NCBI GenBank assembly: GCA_977020255.1
Contig: CDROCS010002105.1
Coordinates: 248,001 to 312,000, forward strand
Source of the DNA: Obrimoposthia wandeli
Taxonomy: Eukaryota
Direction: 5' to 3'
DNA length: 64,000 nt
Shown: positions 55,320 through 62,177 of the stretch, piece after piece
How positions within the stretch are numbered: position 1 is the first letter of the stretch
Layout of the letters: each line of letters begins with the position of its first letter
Position numbers and translations under genes: made by a program
Notes under the pieces: model-generated
Database searches by the model: none
What the model was told of the DNA's origin: nothing
The model's input: the letters and a program-made list of their open reading frames with translations, nothing else

Positions 55320-56303
55320 ATGTCTAAAATGAATTACATACTTCCACTTGCATTACTCATTTCTGGTGTAGTTAATGCTGCAACAGAAAATCCGTGGTAT
55401 GCAGGTGCTCGAGTCGGTGGTACGAGTTACAGTGATTTCTCTGGTCTTGGTTCAGATCAAATTGATAAAGAGGATTGGGGTGGTGGTGTATTCTTAGGGT
55501 ATAACATTGTGCCGTGGTTTGCCGTTGAAGGTGGTTATACTTACCTTGGTGAAGCGGATATAAAAGGTACCAATGCATCAATTGAGCAGCAAGGTATTGA
55601 TCTTGTCGGTAAGTTCACCTGGAACGTAACGAACTCAATTGATTTGTTTGCTAAAGCGGGTGGTTTCTATTATTACGCTGATGGTAGCGGTCTTATTGAT
55701 GCTTCTGATGATGGTATCATTGGTACGGCAGGCGTAGGTGCTGAATACTTCTTTAATAAGAACCTATCGGCACGTCTTGAATACCAATATTATAATGATC
55801 TAGAACTTAAAGATTCAGGCATTGATGCTAGTTGGGACACACATTTCTATGGCATCAGCTTAGTGTATGGTTGGGGCGCTCCTGCACCGGTTGCAGTGGT
55901 TGAACCAGCACCTGAACCAGTACCTGTTCCAGTTATGGTTCAAGTAGAACCAATCACCGTTGCACTGCCGTTTGCGTTTGATAGCGATACGTTATCTCAG
56001 CAAGATATTGATCAGTTACAGCCTATTGCACAGCGTCTGGTTAACTTCCCAGAAACTGAGCTATTTGTTATCGGTCACACTGATAGCCGTGGTGCAGAAG
56101 CATATAACCAAAACCTATCTGAAGAACGTGCAGCAGTGGTTGCTGGTTATTTAGCTACGCATTTTGGTATTGAACCAAGCCGAATTCAGGCGCAAGGACG
56201 TGGCGAACTAGAGCCTGTTGCTGCAAATGATACTGAAGATGGTCGTGGTCAAAACCGTCGTGTAGAAGTATTTACACCTGGTTTTGAGATGGAAGGTCAG
56301 TAA
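55320..56303 (+). CDS. ompA: OmpA-family outer membrane protein
   Basis: NPWYAGARVG beta-barrel start, SARLEYQY, Pro-rich hinge (PAPEPVPVP), GHTDSRGAEAYNQNLSEERA...NRRVE peptidoglycan-binding domain. Confidence 0.92.
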   Translation: MSKMNYILPLALLISGVVNAATENPWYAGARVGGTSYSDFSGLGSDQIDKEDWGGGVFLGYNIVPWFAVEGGYTYLGEADIKGTNASIEQQGIDLVGKFTWNVTNSIDLFAKAGGFYYYADGSGLIDASDDGIIGTAGVGAEYFFNKNLSARLEYQYYNDLELKDSGIDASWDTHFYGISLVYGWGAPAPVAVVEPAPEPVPVPVMVQVEPITVALPFAFDSDTLSQQDIDQLQPIAQRLVNFPETELFVIGHTDSRGAEAYNQNLSEERAAVVAGYLATHFGIEPSRIQAQGRGELEPVAANDTEDGRGQNRRVEVFTPGFEMEGQ

Positions 56304-56385
56304 CCAATCTTTAATAGTATCTTTCTAACAATAAAAGCGCCTTAGGGTAATGCTTGCCAGTTGAACGATGCTGTTAGCCTGACAT

Positions 56386-56418
56386 AATCCGGAATCAGTT
56401 ACTGATTCCGGATTTTTT
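56386..56418. terminator. Element-borne hairpin terminator
   Basis: Perfect 13-bp stem AATCCGGAATCAG-TTA-CTGATTCCGGATT followed by Ts. Confidence 0.85.
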
Positions 56419-56470
56419 ATGCAACTGTCAGACGCTCTGCCTGCGTTTATCTTTATAGCCGTTCTGACTT

Positions 56471-57193
56471 TCAAAGTCTGGCTGAGCTTGGATTAAAGCT
56501 CCCAATCATCGGTATTGGGTTTGGGCATCCCTTCATGACATTTATAACAGTCGATTTGCTGTTAATTACAATGGGGCTGATCTCAATGGCTTTAGGGCTG
56601 GTAATACAGGCTTCTCGACATAATCCACAACCGACACAGTTCTCTTGTATGATGCTGGGTTTTTCATTCTGCCAGACTAAAGTGTCGGGGATTGGGCTGC
56701 TGCCTTTACAGGCTCCACATTCAGGTCCGGAGTAAGGTAAACATGCAGCGCTGTTGACGGTGGTTTTGGCCATAGGAGGACAATCCTTCGCATCAGGACG
56801 TTTTTTGTCTTCTGTTTCACCCGTTTTATCCTTTTCATCTATTATATTTATTGGAAATACCAGTGCTTTCTCATTACAGGCCGTTACACATGGCCAGTCA
56901 GCACAGAGGTGACAGCCCTTATTAATAATATCCATCGCTGGCGTTCCAGCAACGTCAGCACCGCGTTTCAGTGGTAACGGAAAAATGACTTGGTGTGGGC
57001 AGGCACTGATACAATCGCCGCAACGGCTGCAGTTGATTAACAAATCCAGCTCCTGCTCGGCAAAAGGAGGTCGGATCCAGCCCTTGGCTTTTTCAATCGC
57101 TTTTTGTTCGATGATATCGTTGCCAGCCTGGACCATTTTTGCAAAGCTATGTTTAAAAAAACGCCGGCGATCCATTGGATTATCTTTATTCAC
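56471..57193 (-). CDS. NapG/MauM-like 4Fe-4S ferredoxin (start probably MDRRRFF)
   Basis: IRPPFA, CSRCGDCISACP, CHLCADWPCVTAC, CVGCGLCREAC; third cluster has Ser (AGC) where a Cys is expected (CGACKGSSP). Confidence 0.85.
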   Translation of the reverse strand: MNKDNPMDRRRFFKHSFAKMVQAGNDIIEQKAIEKAKGWIRPPFAEQELDLLINCSRCGDCISACPHQVIFPLPLKRGADVAGTPAMDIINKGCHLCADWPCVTACNEKALVFPINIIDEKDKTGETEDKKRPDAKDCPPMAKTTVNSAACLPYSGPECGACKGSSPIPDTLVWQNEKPSIIQENCVGCGLCREACITSPKAIEISPIVINSKSTVINVMKGCPNPIPMIGSFNPSSARL

Positions 57194-57206
57194 GATACAG
57201 TACCTT

Positions 57207-58091
57207 CTACATTCTCATGGCCATCGGTTGTATGAGCATCCACAGATTAATGCCGGAAATTAGCACCGCAAACAACAGCATGGGCAGTAACTGTATGCCT
57301 CGGGCTGCAAATAGATGGCTTCCCCGATGACGAATGACCTGTACGGCAATAAAGAAACCAGCGGCCATTAACAGACCTTGCAAGGCGAATAACATATCTT
57401 CCGGGATCATCATTGCCATATGACGTATGTGTTTTTCCATCATGCTTAATGGTTGAGCATCAATACCCAGTGGATTGCTAAGTAATTCTGCCCAGTTACT
57501 GCTTTCACGAATAAAGTGATTCAGGTTATGGGTAATATGGTAGGAAAAGGCTAACGGCAGAGAGACAAAAGCAAAGCCGGAGAATAGTTTTTTCAAACTG
57601 ATCCCGACAGTTTCATCGCATAACTTTGACGTTAACCAGACGCTCACACCATACAATAAAATGGGCAGTAGTAAGCACACAATCAGGCCAATGGTAAAAC
57701 TCAAAAGGAGCTGGCCGCTGTCATTAATATTTTGCGCTATCTGACTGATATAGATTTGCCAGTCGTCAAGCATGGTTAAGCCGTGAAAAATGGTAAGAGC
57801 CAAAAGAATCAACATGAAGAATGCCTCATCCGTATGAGGACGGGCATCGTTGATCGCCTCGCTACTTGGTGAGCGTAGCTGCCAGCTAATATTGTGAGAG
57901 GGACAACTTTGCGTACAATTTCCGCAGGAGGTGCAATAGGTGTTTTCTTGCAAACGCCCCATGATCTGCTGGGTTGGGCAGGGGGCTATTTTCTCTGAAC
58001 CGTGATAACACTCTAATGTCTTGCGCCTAACTCGTTGACCGTGACAAAGGCTCTGCCACGGTATTGCGGTTATATTTTTTCTATCCGGCAA
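57207..58091 (-). pseudogene. 5'-truncated membrane polyferredoxin (NapH/CcoG-like 4Fe-4S binding protein)
   Basis: TLECYHG...PCP, CTSCGNCTQSCP and C-terminal TM helices are kept; the N-terminal TM part and CxxxCP motif are missing, and the first ~20 codons look like junction sequence. Confidence 0.7.
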
Positions 58092-58654
58092 GCTAGCTTT
58101 TTAAAGTCGACCTGTCCGGAAACAGGATCCCAGCAACGGTTACTGATGCCATTTGCCAGCCATTTGTTTTTCTTGGGATCGGCACTGTCTGCCACTGAAA
58201 GATTCCAAGGACCAAACATATAACCGCGCGGTACACTGTTTCGAGCGGGTTTCACTAAACTATCCGTGCCACCGACCTGTGCAGCTCTTTGTGCTTCAAC
58301 AGCGGCCGAACGGTTTGGCAGGGTTTCATGGCTGCGTAAATAGGTAACAATGGCGCTAATGTCGTCACGGTTAAGATGAGCGTAAGGGGCCATGGCAGTC
58401 CCTTTTCGACCATCACGAATTGTGGACATCAGGTATTTGTCGGAGGAAGTTGAAAGTAACTCTGGGTTGGATAAAGATGGGGAAAATCCCGGTTTGCCAA
58501 TCGCATCTGGCTGATGACAAAAAACACAGTTCTGATTATAAAGCGTTTCACCTTCTTTAATTTTTTCGCTATTTGCCGCAAAGGTAAATGAACCAAACAG
58601 CAAGTTGACACAGAAGGCCATCAAGGAGATAAAATAAGTCTTTTCCCTATTCAC
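58070..58654 (-). pseudogene. Chimeric ORF: c-type cytochrome N-terminus fused in frame to the C-terminal ~68 aa of a NapA-like molybdoenzyme
   Basis: Signal peptide + CVFCH heme motif + TAM (Met ligand), then VPRGYMFGPW...WDPVSGQVDFKKLACRIEKI, resembling the NapA end ([20 protein letters not shown]). Confidence 0.72.
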
Positions 58655-59009
58655 GATCTGCTTCTTTATGTATTTATTATATTTATTTTTAAAATAAATA
58701 TAGTAAATGTTTTGTCTTGCGCAATCTTATTGTTTTATTAGAAGTGGTTGTTGTTAAATGGAGATAGTTATTATTAAGTAAGGGGTGGTTATTTTATGAA
58801 CTGTCTAATTATAAGGTTTTTTAATTAATAACTAAGCCAGTCAGTTATATTCTCTTGTAAAAAAAGATAATCCCATATGCTTAATTATAAATTTATCAAT
58901 CAATTACAAACGATAGGTTGTTCCATGATGTTATATTTATGTTGAGATTGACTATGCTGGTAACTGATAATAGAGGGTAGACGTCTGTTTAATTTACTGA
59001 TTTTAAATT

Positions 59010-59023
59010 TTGATCTAGATCAT
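59010..59023. promoter_or_regulatory. FNR-like box
   Basis: TTGAT-CTAG-ATCAT vs TTGAT-N4-ATCAA (9/10), ~355 bp upstream of the cytochrome gene. Confidence 0.35.
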
Positions 59024-59269
59024 CTAAATGTAAACTGTTGTCTATTTGTTTATTAATGAAAGCTATTATTAAGAGTTCTTAGTATTTTTTAATTCCACCA
59101 TCAAGTTTTATTATTTATTTTTCTTTACCCCGTTGTATATTACAAAGGGTTGGAAAATACGGTTTTGTCACAAAGTTATGCTGAAGTACATCCGCTTAAT
59201 GTTAACCACAAAGCCAACCACTGCATCACCAGAGATGCAGTAAGTTGGACTGTCATGAAGTAGGGTAGA

Positions 59270-60910
59270 CTAGCCAAGTTCGAAGAATTGAACTTGTTTC
59301 AATACTTGCTTGCTAACCTGATTCATTTCATCACTGCAGCTTGCTGTTTCGGCACAAATGGTTGCTGACTTTTGAGTCAATTCTTGTACAGTATGCATGT
59401 TACCGCTGATCTCAGTCGCGACAGCACTTTGTTGCTCAGCGGCCGTGGCAATTTGCTGCGTCTGATCATTAACTTGATGAATCAAATCTAGAATGTCTTC
59501 AATCATCTGGTTACTTTCTACCACTTTCCCTTCAGCTGAAGTGGCAATTTCAGTGCTGTCAAACATCATTTTAACTGCATTTTCACAAGCTGAGCTGAGT
59601 TGATTCAGCATGGCTTCGATTTCATTTACTGATGATTGCGAACGTTGAGCAAGGGTTCTTACTTCATCGGCAACAACAGCGAATCCACGTCCTTGTTCAC
59701 CAGCTCGTGCAGCTTCAATGGCTGCATTGAGGGCAAGCAGATTTGTTTGTTCAGCAATATTACGAATCACATCGAGGATACTTTCGATTCTTGTTGATTC
59801 GTCTTTTAGCAGGCCAACGACATTGGCAGTTTCATTCAGATTACCAACCAGTTTAATAACGGCGTCTTTGGTCTGATTTGAAGAGTCGATCCCTTTGTTC
59901 GCCAGCACCGCCATGGTATCTGAAGTTTGCGCAGATTCAGAAGTATTGTCGGCAATATTCATGCTGGTGATCGTCAATTCTTCAATGGCCGTTACAACCT
60001 GTACAGTGTGATCTGACACTTCAGAAGCTGAAATTTGAATATTGTTATTGGCTTCTAGTAGTGTTTGACTGTTGGTATCGACAATCTGCGTCGAGCTATT
60101 GATAGCAGAAAGCGTATTGTTCAGGTTTTGAATTGTGGTGTTCAATGCACGGCTGAGTTCGGCTATTTCATCTTTTCCGTCAACAATACACGACACATTC
60201 AGTTTGCCTTTGGCCATTGCGTGCGCAGTATCCATTACATGCTTAATACTATTAGTAATTTTTTTTGATAAGAATTGACTAAAGATTACAGCGATGGCAA
60301 CTGAAATAATGATGGATAAATAAAAGACATAATTCGCATAACTGATTGCATTTTTGGTGTCCTTATTTGCGGTATCTGCTGCGCTATAATTCATTTTTTG
60401 AAAATCATGAAAGAATTCGTTAAGGGCGGAATATGCATCGCGGTAATTTGAGAATACAGAAAAAGGGGCTTTATTATCTGGTGCATTTTCCATTGCTTTA
60501 ATGAAAGCCGATGAATTGTTCTGGAAAGTTGTTACTACTTGTCTAAGTTTAATCGTAGTCGTTGCATCACCGGCAAAGTCTTTGGATAAGGCATTCAATA
60601 ACTGTGGAGTATCCGCCATGTTTTTATTAATGCTCGACACATAGCCATCAACCTGATTCGAAAGGTTCAACAAGTAAGCAATCTGCAATCCTCGAACATT
60701 CAACATAATCTCGGTTTGCGTATCTTTGACTTCTTCAAATAACAGTGAAACTGCGAAGTTTTGTGTATAAAACTGATTGAAATTGTTCGCAATTCGATCA
60801 TTAGCTGATTTTATAAAAAGTAATGATATAGCAAAAATGGATAAAATCACGCCAATCAAAAGATAGAACTTTGTTCTTATTGTTAAGTTATTTATGTTCA
60901 TAACAGCCAA
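59270..60910 (-). CDS. Methyl-accepting chemotaxis protein
   Basis: Two TM segments with a helical periplasmic domain, HAMP ([11 protein letters not shown]), [34 protein letters not shown]. Confidence 0.96.
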
Positions 60911-61190
60911 CTATAAAGAGTGGTTAATCCAAGAGTGAGTGGTTGAAAATTGCACTACACATATATGTTACAGCTTAAAACTGCGAGATTTGAGCGCGGT
61001 ATTCGCTAGCGGTATGCAGTTATAATGTGAGGGTATGCTCTCTTGTTGTTATAGCGGCCGTAATATTAATAACTTTAGAGATACTTTAAAGGGTAAAGCA
61101 ATGCCGCTCACGTTAAGTGAACGGCATCACGCCTTAGGGCGCTTTTAATGACGCATTAACTCAATGTTAGTCGCAAAGCTAGTCGTAATT

Positions 61191-61982
61191 TTATAACTTA
61201 CAGCTTTGTCGTTTTGTGTTCGTTGCCGGTAATTGAGCTATTTCAGCTTTTAAATCATCAATACGCGTTGAATGGGAAGGGTGAGTTGATAGTAATTCAG
61301 GAGGTTGATTTCCTCCCGATGCTTTCGCCATGTTTTGCCATAGTTCAACACTCTGGTATGGGTCAAACCCTGACTCAGCCATTAACCTTAACCCAATAAT
61401 ATCTGATTCAGATTCTTGTGCTCGTCCGTAAGGCATAAGTACGCCATATTGCACACCTAAGCCTAAACCTGCCATAGCAGCACCTTGGTATTGTGTACCG
61501 CTCATTGCAATATTGGTAAGCCCTAAACCTGCGTTTGCGAGCTGGCTACGAGATAACCGTTCATTACTATGCTGAGCCATTACATGACCGATCTCATGGC
61601 CAATAACCGTTGCTAACTGATCTTGGTTTTTAGCTACGTTAAGTAACCCAGTATAGACGCCAATTTTACCACCAGGAAGTGCAAATGCATTAACTTGGTC
61701 GCTATCAAAAACAACCACTTCCCATTGGTCAAAATCAGGCTGTGGGCCTAATTGGGTTGTGATTGCGCTTGTAACACATTGAACATATTGGTTAGTTTTA
61801 GCATCGGTGTTGATCTTCTCTTGCTTTTTCAACTCTTCAAATGACTGAGCACCAAGCTGAGACATATCATTTCCTGAAAAAAGCAAAACTTGTTGTCGGC
61901 CAGTGGGAGAGCTTGAGCACGCAGTAAGAGTAAGTGACGATGCGACTAATGCTGTTATAAACAGAGGATGCTGTAATTTCAT
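61191..61982 (-). CDS. M48-family Zn metallopeptidase lipoprotein
   Basis: Start ATG 61982 with GGAGG-like RBS; lipobox LTAC; VNAFALPGG, GHEIGH (HExxH), ESESD, LSTHP. Confidence 0.92.
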   Translation of the reverse strand: MKLQHPLFITALVASSLTLTACSSSPTGRQQVLLFSGNDMSQLGAQSFEELKKQEKINTDAKTNQYVQCVTSAITTQLGPQPDFDQWEVVVFDSDQVNAFALPGGKIGVYTGLLNVAKNQDQLATVIGHEIGHVMAQHSNERLSRSQLANAGLGLTNIAMSGTQYQGAAMAGLGLGVQYGVLMPYGRAQESESDIIGLRLMAESGFDPYQSVELWQNMAKASGGNQPPELLSTHPSHSTRIDDLKAEIAQLPATNTKRQSCKL

Positions 61983-62177
61983 ATGAATGACTCCTTCCAT
62001 TCCTTAATTATAAATTATGTATCTATTATGTCGTGACTATCTATTCAAGTACCAGATTAATTGCTCATATTTAATTGTTATTTATATGCAAATTAAATCG
62101 CTGGTGGGTGATTTGATGGATTTAAGAAGGTTAACTGGTATTCTATCTACAGAGTAGACCGAACGTTAGGTAAATTA

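What the first reader, a model, noticed from the sequence alone, without database searches (positions are those of the whole stretch)
56338..61139. Transposase-less 4.8-kb cargo element with IS4-like ends inserted into the ompA terminator
Seen: an exact 10-bp direct repeat CGCCTTAGGG (56338-56347, 61130-61139) brackets 4,782 bp. Deleting the segment and one copy rebuilds a perfect bidirectional terminator AAAAGCGCC-TTAG-GGCGCTTTT between ompA and the convergent M48 peptidase. The ends TAATGCTTGCCAGTTGAACG and (rc) TGATGCCGTTCACTTAACG are imperfect inverted repeats of each other and resemble the IS4 IR (TAATGCCGATCAGTTAAG). The right end forms a hairpin and reads ...SNAAHVK*, like an IS4 transposase 3' end. 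Established: IS4-family elements make ~10-13 bp TSDs, and some (IS231 MIC/tIS derivatives) carry passengers without their own transposase. Inference: this is a non-autonomous IS4-type cassette, or a collapsed composite transposon, that delivered a chemoreceptor and an anaerobic respiration operon. No gene caller would label it mobile.
Basis: partly seen in the sequence, partly recalled or inferred. Interest (0 to 1): 0.85.

Follow-up and report, generated by a model that had tools for sequence, protein, structure and literature searches.

The report
Fossil IS4-ended cargo transposon in Photobacterium
A block of respiration and chemotaxis genes in a deep-sea Photobacterium sits between the two ends of an IS4-type jumping gene that has lost its own transposase; it landed once, long ago, in the terminator between ompA and a peptidase gene, and in this strain it has since shrunk from about 14.3 kb to 4.8 kb by internal deletions.

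Summary
The 10-bp repeat CGCCTTAGGG occurs only at 56338-56347 and 61130-61139. Removing the 4,782 bp between the copies plus one copy rebuilds a perfect terminator. Photobacterium alginatilyticum has that terminator intact (21/22 identical) between convergent ompA and M48 genes, so it is an empty site.

Both ends are real IS4-subgroup ends. They match E. coli IS4 and intact 1.4-kb IS4-family elements in Vibrio pelagius and Pseudoalteromonas plasmids:
- The left end keeps the terminal repeat, the subterminal hairpin, the T-run and the transposase ATG, with up to 27 N-terminal codons in a relative.
- The right end keeps the last ~35 nt, including NAAH(V/L)K-stop.
- No transposase body remains.

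In P. indicum and P. frigidiphilum the same ends at the same site enclose 14.3 kb, carrying a NapA-like molybdoenzyme operon, a DsbD-like gene and a chemoreceptor. The window's copy lost 9.5 kb through four deletions, three at 9-10-bp microhomologies, which wrecked the operon.

The element was found only at this one site, and it diverges in step with its flanks. It is therefore an old, vertically inherited fossil, either a collapsed composite transposon or a MIC-like cassette. It is a new member of a known kind and of moderate interest. The scan had not reported it on other DNA.

The parts
56329..56347 (.). Left half of the split ompA/M48 bidirectional terminator. The last 10 nt (56338-56347) are the left copy of the target-site duplication CGCCTTAGGG.
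   Evidence: The intact counterpart is in P. alginatilyticum.
56348..56374 (+). Left terminal inverted repeat of an IS4-subgroup element (TAATGC...GTTGAACGAT). In this strain the conserved GATCAG core has three substitutions (TGCCAG).
   Evidence: Alignment A1 with E. coli IS4, the V. pelagius and Pseudoalteromonas IS, and Photobacterium relatives. The relatives' left end matches the V. pelagius IS at 24 of 27 positions (read).
56386..56421 (+). IS-derived subterminal hairpin (13 bp stem, 56386-56414), T-run, and the former transposase ATG (56419-56421). It probably now acts as the ompA terminator.
   Evidence: It is the strongest terminator-like site in the region and folds as predicted. The same hairpin, T-run and ATG are present in IS4 and the marine IS.
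56419..56439 (+). Remnant of the transposase N-terminus (MQLSDAL). It is longer in P. frigidiphilum, about 27-30 codons.
   Evidence: ungapped 27-residue alignment from residue 1, score 57-58 against 28 +/- 3.5 for shuffles.
56471..57193 (-). NapG-like ferredoxin ORF fused to the tail of the lost NapC/NirT-like cytochrome gene. Deletion junction 1 lies at 56555-56563 (9-bp repeat TTTGCTGTT; 647 bp lost).
57207..58091 (-). C-terminal part of the 508-aa NapH-like membrane protein. Deletion junction 2 lies at 58013-58022 (about 3.7 kb lost: the gene's 5' part, a 195-aa gene, two NapG-like genes and one NapH-like gene).
58070..58654 (-). Chimeric ORF made of the dihaem cytochrome c N-terminal part joined to the last ~71 codons of the NapA-like molybdoenzyme. 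Deletion junction 3 lies at 58273-58282 (2.78 kb lost).
59161..59191 (.). 31-nt filler at deletion 4. A 2.29-kb stretch holding a 784-aa DsbD-like gene present in relatives is missing here.
59270..60910 (-). Methyl-accepting chemotaxis protein (546 aa). It appears intact and is 96-97% identical in DNA to the relatives' gene.
61095..61129 (+). Right end of the IS4-subgroup element: the last 7 transposase codons (SNAAHVK-stop), a 12-bp hairpin at 61100-61128, and the terminus GGCATCA (canonical GGCATTA).
   Evidence: Alignment A2. It matches the V. pelagius IS over 33 nt at 91%. Fold, translation.
61130..61148 (.). Right copy of the duplication (61130-61139) and the right half of the terminator.
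   Evidence: It is lost in most relatives through a 29-bp or a 7-bp deletion.

Best explanation
The segment is the decayed remains of one IS4-subgroup transposition event.

The insertion. In an ancestor of the Photobacterium profundum / indicum / frigidiphilum clade, a DDE transposase of the IS4 subgroup inserted DNA bounded by its left and right terminal repeats into the hairpin of the terminator shared by ompA and an M48 peptidase gene. Staggered cuts 10 bp apart gave the duplication CGCCTTAGGG.

The contents. The bounded DNA was about 14.3 kb and carried:
- a nine-gene NapA-like molybdoenzyme respiratory operon (dihaem cytochrome c, an 899-aa molybdopterin oxidoreductase, several NapG/NapH-like iron-sulfur proteins, and a NapC/NirT-type quinol dehydrogenase);
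- a DsbD-like gene;
- a chemoreceptor gene.
Of the IS itself only about 75-165 nt on the left and about 35 nt on the right remain. The element is therefore either a composite transposon whose two direct IS copies lost their inner parts, or a MIC-type cassette moved by a transposase supplied in trans.

Later history. It has been inherited vertically. In this strain four deletions, three of them between 9-10-bp imperfect or perfect repeats, removed 9.5 kb and broke the operon. Only the chemoreceptor and fragments are left. The left repeat core and the right terminus are also mutated, so the element is very probably immobile.

Side effect. The IS-derived subterminal hairpin with its T-run probably now terminates ompA.

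Shown: the duplication, the empty site, homology of both ends to IS4-subgroup elements, absence of a transposase, the 14.3-kb ancestral form, and the deletions.
Inferred: that the cargo travelled with the ends, and the terminator role of the hairpin.

The confidence given (0.8) is for an IS4-type insertion that left a now-fossil element bounded by IS ends. That the cargo moved as one unit between those ends I rate lower, at about 0.6.
For: - Duplication and rebuilt terminator.
- Empty site: P. alginatilyticum has an intact AAAAAAAGCGCCTTCGGGCGCTTTTTT between convergent ompA and M48, with the same neighbouring genes on the M48 side.
- Left end: it matches IS4 and intact IS4-family elements in the terminal repeat, subterminal hairpin, T-run and ATG.
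- Right end: it matches the last 33-35 nt of those IS at 86-93%. Left-end and right-end queries hit the same V. pelagius IS, 1.4 kb apart and in the same orientation.
- The comparison elements are real IS. They have 12-bp duplications and transposases matching NF033592, PF01609 and PF13006.
- N-terminal transposase remnant.
- IS4-subgroup features (duplication of 10-13 bp, ends -AATR--------WTW): PMC2266710, Table 1.
- Same ends, same site, 14,276-14,297 bp in P. indicum and P. frigidiphilum.
- Four deletions with their junction repeats.
- Cargo and flanks are equally diverged, 90-97%.
Against: - No second copy or second insertion site of the ends-plus-cargo unit was found. Every related contig or locus that carries the element (about a dozen) has it at the same ompA-M48 site. 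Movement of the cargo as a unit is therefore not shown.
- The homologous operon in Shewanella has no IS ends, no chemoreceptor gene and no DsbD-like gene beside it.
- Only one syntenic empty site was recovered. In P. swingsii and P. gaetbulicola, M48 is not next to ompA.
- No inner IS ends that would prove a composite origin are present.
- No cognate transposase lies in the 64-kb window. The rest of the genome could not be searched.
Confidence: 0.8

Rival explanations
1. IS first, cargo later. A plain 1.4-kb IS4-subgroup element inserted into the terminator and made the duplication. The 14-kb cargo then replaced the transposase gene in situ, by illegitimate recombination or by recombination with incoming DNA that carried copies of the same IS. 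On this view the cargo never transposed between these ends.
For: - Both surviving remnants have the polarity of one single IS: the transposase 5' part on the left and the 3' part on the right, both on the + strand.
- No other copy of the unit exists anywhere that was searched.
- The locus is clearly prone to illegitimate deletions.
Against: - It needs a rare double event that removes about 1.2 kb of the IS and brings in 14 kb.
- No IS-only state was seen in any relative.
- Two direct IS copies of a composite transposon would leave exactly the same polarity.
- DNA bounded by IS ends and flanked by a duplication is the classical mark of transposition of the whole unit.
Confidence: 0.2
2. The element is a still-active, non-autonomous cassette (MIC or tIS type) that is mobilised today by IS4-subgroup transposases elsewhere in the genome.
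For: - Both ends and the duplication are present.
- IS4-family elements are reported to be greatly expanded in P. profundum SS9 (PMC2266710).
- Related transposases occur in Photobacterium species.
Against: - Only a single site is occupied in all genomes and metagenome contigs.
- Divergence equals that of the flanks.
- In this strain the conserved GATCAG core of the left repeat has three substitutions and the right terminus is GGCATCA instead of GGCATTA.
- One relative (L009) has lost the outermost nucleotides of the right end, and most relatives have lost the right copy of the duplication.
Confidence: 0.07
3. The segment is not a transposon. It is either a genomic islet integrated by a site-specific recombinase at a 10-bp core site, or the repeat is a chance match.
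For: Insertion in an intergenic hairpin and a short direct repeat are also seen with some integrative elements.
Against: - No integrase or recombinase gene is present in the 4.8-kb or the 14.3-kb version.
- Both ends are homologous to IS4-subgroup termini.
- The repeat is unique to the two junctions, and removing one copy restores a terminator that exists intact in a relative.
Confidence: 0.02

Closest known systems
IS4 (E. coli) and IS4-subgroup insertion sequences, e.g. the 1,405-bp element in Vibrio pelagius plasmid pATCC25916 and the 1,413-bp element in the Pseudoalteromonas sp. HL-AS1 plasmid
   Same: - Terminal repeats beginning TAATGC.
- A subterminal hairpin and T-run immediately before the transposase ATG.
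- A right-end hairpin that contains the stop codon (NAAH-L/V-K-stop).
- A target duplication of about one helical turn (10 bp here; 12 bp in the three intact elements).
   Different: There is no DDE transposase; only about 7-30 N-terminal and 7 C-terminal codons remain. The length is 4.8 kb (ancestrally 14.3 kb) instead of 1.4-1.65 kb. It carries 11 ancestral passenger genes.
MIC231 and other mobile insertion cassettes (IS231 subgroup of the IS4 family, Bacillus cereus group) and transporter IS (tIS)
   Same: IS-type ends without the element's own transposase, passenger genes inside, and a flanking target duplication. Movement would need a transposase in trans.
   Different: - MIC231 elements are small (my own knowledge: roughly 1-3 kb, one or a few passengers) and occur in several copies.
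- This element derives from the IS4 subgroup. [quoted passage not shown]
- It is 14 kb long, single-copy, and shows no sign of repeated movement.
Composite transposons of the IS4 family (Tn10 with IS10, Tn5 with IS50)
   Same: Cargo lies between the outer ends of IS4-family elements, and one duplication flanks the whole unit.
   Different: No complete flanking IS copies and no inner ends are left. If it was composite, both IS copies have been reduced to their outer tips. The orientation implies direct, not inverted, IS copies.

Membership tests
IS4 family, IS4 subgroup (autonomous insertion sequence) | Terminal inverted repeats with the subgroup's end pattern (-AATR--------WTW; PMC2266710, Table 1) | tested here: met
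   The left end is TAATG...; the right end is TGATG... in the window and TAATG... in relatives. Both align with IS4 and two intact marine IS. Position 16 of the left end is G, as in the V. pelagius IS.
IS4 family, IS4 subgroup (autonomous insertion sequence) | Target-site duplication of 10-13 bp | tested here: met
   An exact 10-bp duplication. The three intact comparison elements have 12 bp.
IS4 family, IS4 subgroup (autonomous insertion sequence) | Encodes a DDE transposase with an IS4 N-terminal domain (PF01609 + PF13006; NF033592) | tested here: not met
   tblastn with three IS4-subgroup transposases finds nothing in the element or in the whole window beyond the terminal codons.
IS4 family, IS4 subgroup (autonomous insertion sequence) | Length 1.4-1.65 kb | tested here: not met
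   4,782 bp here; 14,276-14,297 bp in relatives.
Mobile insertion cassette (MIC) / non-autonomous IS derivative | Both IS ends present, no transposase, passenger genes inside, flanking duplication | tested here: met
Mobile insertion cassette (MIC) / non-autonomous IS derivative | Evidence of movement: several copies or different sites, or mobilisation in trans | tested here: not met
   Every related contig or locus that carries the element has it at the one ompA-M48 site. Trans-mobilisation cannot be tested with these tools.
Mobile insertion cassette (MIC) / non-autonomous IS derivative | A cognate transposase present in the same genome | not testable with these tools
   None in the 64-kb window, and the rest of the genome was not available. 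Related transposases exist in Photobacterium species, and an IS4-family expansion in P. profundum SS9 is reported (PMC2266710).
Composite transposon | Two IS copies flanking the cargo | tested here: not met
   Only one left end and one right end per locus, with no inner ends. A collapsed composite remains possible but is not demonstrable.

The most novel reading that the evidence does not exclude
IS4-subgroup transposases can move transposase-less cassettes of more than 14 kb in trans. This would be MIC-type behaviour, so far documented within the IS4 family only for the IS231 subgroup. On this reading, that route delivered a complete, still uncharacterised NapA-like respiratory operon plus a chemoreceptor into the ancestor of the deep-sea P. 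profundum clade.
Probability: 0.3. Interest if true: 0.5.

Novelty: new member of a known kind. Interest (0 to 1): 0.4.

Why it matters
- It is a clean, fully documented case of a metabolic operon and a chemoreceptor acquired at a neutral intergenic site through IS4-type transposition. The evidence includes the empty site, the duplication, both ends, the ancestral form and the decay series. No gene caller would flag it, because no transposase is left.
- It shows that IS4-subgroup ends can bound large cargo.
- It shows that an IS's own subterminal terminator can replace the host terminator the IS destroyed.
- It gives a dated series of microhomology deletions that turn a 14-kb island into a 4.8-kb remnant.
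- It does not reveal a new mechanism.

Tried and rejected
- Exact-protein look-ups of the window's OmpA and M48 found nothing on record.
- tblastn with E. coli InsG and with the two marine transposases found no transposase body in the element, its relatives or the window.
- The genome-wide note search was uninformative: its hits came from unrelated DNA. The word search found nothing.
- Contexts of M48 homologues P0003 and P0004 (uncultured relatives), P. swingsii and P. gaetbulicola are not syntenic with ompA, so they give no further empty sites.
- Shewanella loci with the homologous operon carry no IS4-type ends.
- The metagenome scan for the cargo/IS junction returned only the same site.
- I found no source for the 31-nt filler at deletion 4.
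- An integrase-type island and a chance repeat were considered and rejected (see the rival explanations).
- I also considered that the relatives' shorter right junction (GGCATTA directly followed by CTCAGTG) is ancestral. I rejected this because it leaves no duplication and no right terminator half. It is explained instead by a 29-bp deletion between GCATTA repeats.
Full report
**1. Observation**

- The 10-mer CGCCTTAGGG lies at 56338-56347 and 61130-61139. It occurs nowhere else in the window: 0.06 copies are expected by chance, and none of 100 shuffles gave two.
- The left flank ends in AAAAGCGCCTTAGGG and the right flank continues CGCCTTAGGGCGCTTTT. Deleting the 4,782 bp and one repeat copy gives a perfect stem-loop, GCGCC-TTAG-GGCGC, with an A-run before it and a T-run after it.
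- The flanking genes are an OmpA porin (55320-56303, +) and an M48 peptidase (61191-62000, -), which are convergent.
- The two quoted end sequences are present and unique in the window. The G+C content of the insert does not stand out.

**2. Whose genome, and what do relatives have?**

OmpA finds three Photobacterium species: P. profundum ATCC BAA-1252 (96%), P. indicum (92%) and P. frigidiphilum (91%). In all three, the sequence just after the ompA half-terminator is the same left end (TAATGCTGATCAGTTGAACGATCC, or TAATGTCGATCAGTTGAGCG), followed by the same hairpin.

The interval to the M48 gene is much longer in the relatives: 14,276 bp in P. indicum and 14,297 bp in P. frigidiphilum. In window orientation it holds:
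- a NapC/NirT-type tetrahaem cytochrome;
- a NapG-like ferredoxin;
- a 508-aa NapH-like protein;
- a 195-aa protein;
- a second NapG-like ferredoxin;
- a NapH-like protein;
- a third NapG-like ferredoxin;
- an 899-aa molybdopterin oxidoreductase, most similar to NapA but far below the NapA cut-off;
- a dihaem cytochrome c.

All nine of these are on the minus strand. They are followed by a 784-aa DsbD-like protein and a 543-aa chemoreceptor.

**3. The window's copy is a deletion derivative**

Collinear BLAST segments show four losses relative to the relatives:

| Junction in window | Lost | Junction sequence |
|---|---|---|
| 56555-56563 | 647 bp | perfect 9-bp repeat TTTGCTGTT |
| 58013-58022 | about 3.7 kb | CTAATGTCTT / CTAACGCCTT |
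| 58273-58282 | 2.78 kb | CGACCTGTGC / CGCCCTGTGC |
| 59161-59191 | 2.29 kb (the DsbD-like gene) | 31 nt of filler, no repeat |

These deletions created the fused or truncated ORFs at 56471-57193, 57207-58091 and 58070-58654. Only the chemoreceptor gene looks intact.

**4. Empty site**

Among M48 homologues, P. alginatilyticum has the same gene neighbourhood on the M48 side (4HBT thioesterase, DUF3389, APH, RimB-like, DUF2797, cytochrome c'). In it, ompA converges on M48 only 90 bp away. The spacer holds an intact terminator, AAAAAAAGCGCCTTCGGGCGCTTTTTT (fold). The window's flanks, joined with one repeat copy, align to it with 21 of 22 terminator positions identical.

Two other species (P. swingsii and P. 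gaetbulicola) have M48 next to other genes and are uninformative.

**5. The ends are IS4-subgroup ends**

I fetched IS4 from E. coli K-12. Its left end runs as follows: terminal repeat TAATGCCGATCAGTT..GATCAGTTGACCGATCC, then a hairpin (AATCCGGAAAC...GTTTCCGGATT), a T-run, and the insG ATG. The Photobacterium left end has the same layout.

A search of plasmids with the two Photobacterium ends hit, with both queries, one annotated IS4-family element in Vibrio pelagius pATCC25916. The two hits lie 1.4 kb apart in the same orientation. The right-end query also hit an element in a Pseudoalteromonas plasmid.
- Both elements are intact (1,405 and 1,413 bp), with 12-bp duplications.
- Both encode transposases. 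The V. pelagius one was tested and matches NF033592, and its close homologues carry PF01609 and PF13006.
- The relatives' left end matches the V. pelagius element at 24 of the first 27 positions (read). The window's last 33 nt match it at 91%.
- The right end reads SNAAHVK-stop. The marine transposases end NAAHLK or AAHVK.
- At the left, the window keeps MQLSDAL after the ATG. P. frigidiphilum keeps about 27 codons that align without gaps from residue 1 of IS4-subgroup transposases, scoring 57-58 against 28 +/- 3.5 (maximum 43) for shuffled controls.
- Nothing else of a transposase is present in the element, its 14-kb relatives or the whole window.

Published features of the IS4 subgroup fit apart from size and the missing transposase: 1.4-1.65 kb, ends -AATR--------WTW, duplications of 10-13 bp (PMC2266710, Table 1).

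**6. History of the right junction**

Three states exist:

| State | Where found | Right junction |
|---|---|---|
| A | the window | full terminus plus duplication plus right terminator half |
| B | metagenome contig L009 | 7 bp missing across the terminus/duplication boundary |
| C | P. indicum, P. frigidiphilum and five other contigs | GGCATTA directly followed by CTCAGTG |

State C is what a 29-bp deletion between two GCATTA motifs would give: one motif is the IS terminus and the other lies in the M48 3' region. States B and C cannot be derived from each other, so a state like A is ancestral. The left copy of the duplication has drifted in P. indicum (CACCCTAGGG) and in P. profundum BAA-1252 (TACCCTAGGG).

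**7. Age and mobility**

- Every related contig or locus that carries the element has it at this one site.
- DNA identity between the window and the relatives is similar for cargo (92-97%) and flanks (90-94%).
- The insertion therefore predates the split of these species and has been inherited vertically.
- In the window, the conserved GATCAG core of the left repeat reads TGCCAG and the right terminus reads GGCATCA. This argues that the copy is immobile.
- Related transposases are common in marine Gammaproteobacteria, including Photobacterium species. An expansion of the IS4 family in P. profundum SS9 has been reported (PMC2266710). A transposase source in trans is therefore plausible but was not examined here.

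**8. Mechanism**

Shown: an IS4-type insertion signature, consisting of the ends, a 10-bp duplication, and a matching empty site.

Inferred: the 14.3 kb travelled between those ends. This could have happened in two ways:
- as a composite transposon with two direct IS copies that later lost everything but their outer tips;
- as a MIC-type cassette moved in trans.

The rival history, in which a single IS landed first and its interior was later replaced by the cargo, cannot be excluded. I rate it at about 0.2.

The homologous operon in Shewanella (enzyme 91% identical) has no such ends and no chemoreceptor or DsbD-like gene beside it. No donor context was found.

The IS-derived hairpin and T-run at 56386-56420 is the strongest terminator-like site downstream of ompA. 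It probably took over termination after the host hairpin was split (inference).

**9. Comparison with known elements, and novelty**

The element works like a member of the IS4 family's non-autonomous derivatives (MIC231) or a collapsed Tn5/Tn10-type composite transposon. It fails membership as an IS because it has no transposase and the wrong size. It also lacks the evidence of repeated movement expected of an active MIC.

PMC2266710 noted in 2008 that passenger DNA had been seen only in the IS231 subgroup. In two literature searches I found no description of this element.

I class it as a new member of a known kind. It is well worth annotating and of moderate interest (0.4), but it is not a new mechanism.

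Noticed in passing
L005:10666-13365 (P. indicum) and relatives; remnant at window 58070-58282: The 899-aa NapA-like molybdoenzyme scores far below the NapA cut-offs (336 bits against 904). Yet it is 81-91% identical across Shewanella, Psychromonas, Methylococcales, Thiohalobacter and alphaproteobacterial MAGs. In the two Shewanella genomes and the Photobacterium relatives whose neighbourhoods were examined, it sits with a dihaem cytochrome c and NapG/NapH-like genes. This looks like a widespread, uncharacterised respiratory module.
   Followed up: partly
window 56555-56563, 58013-58022, 58273-58282, 59161-59191: One strain carries four independent internal deletions in a single 14-kb island. 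Three lie at 9-10-bp direct repeats, and one has a 31-nt filler of unknown origin.
   Followed up: yes
L005:5255-5290, L007:5257-5292, L009:926-960, L023-L026: The right junction exists in three states among relatives. The same 29-bp deletion between GCATTA motifs is found in both P. indicum and P. frigidiphilum, while a frigidiphilum-like metagenome contig keeps the terminator half. This suggests either a recurrent deletion or recombination.
   Followed up: partly
L001:11090-11160 and L002:11100-11170: P. profundum BAA-1252 and P. indicum carry about 60-70 extra bases right after the former transposase ATG. The window and P. frigidiphilum lack them. The stretch has short inverted termini (CCATTAA...TTAATGG) and may be a small secondary insertion.
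   Followed up: no
L018:556-4216 (Vibrio pelagius pATCC25916): The intact IS4-family element used for comparison is itself inserted inside an IS66-family element, between its tnpB and transposase genes. It has a 12-bp duplication, GTGTTTACCCTG.
   Followed up: no
window 61165-61190: The M48 3' region in the window holds a short local duplication, GTCGCAAAGCTAGTCG, where relatives have a single GTCG.
   Followed up: no
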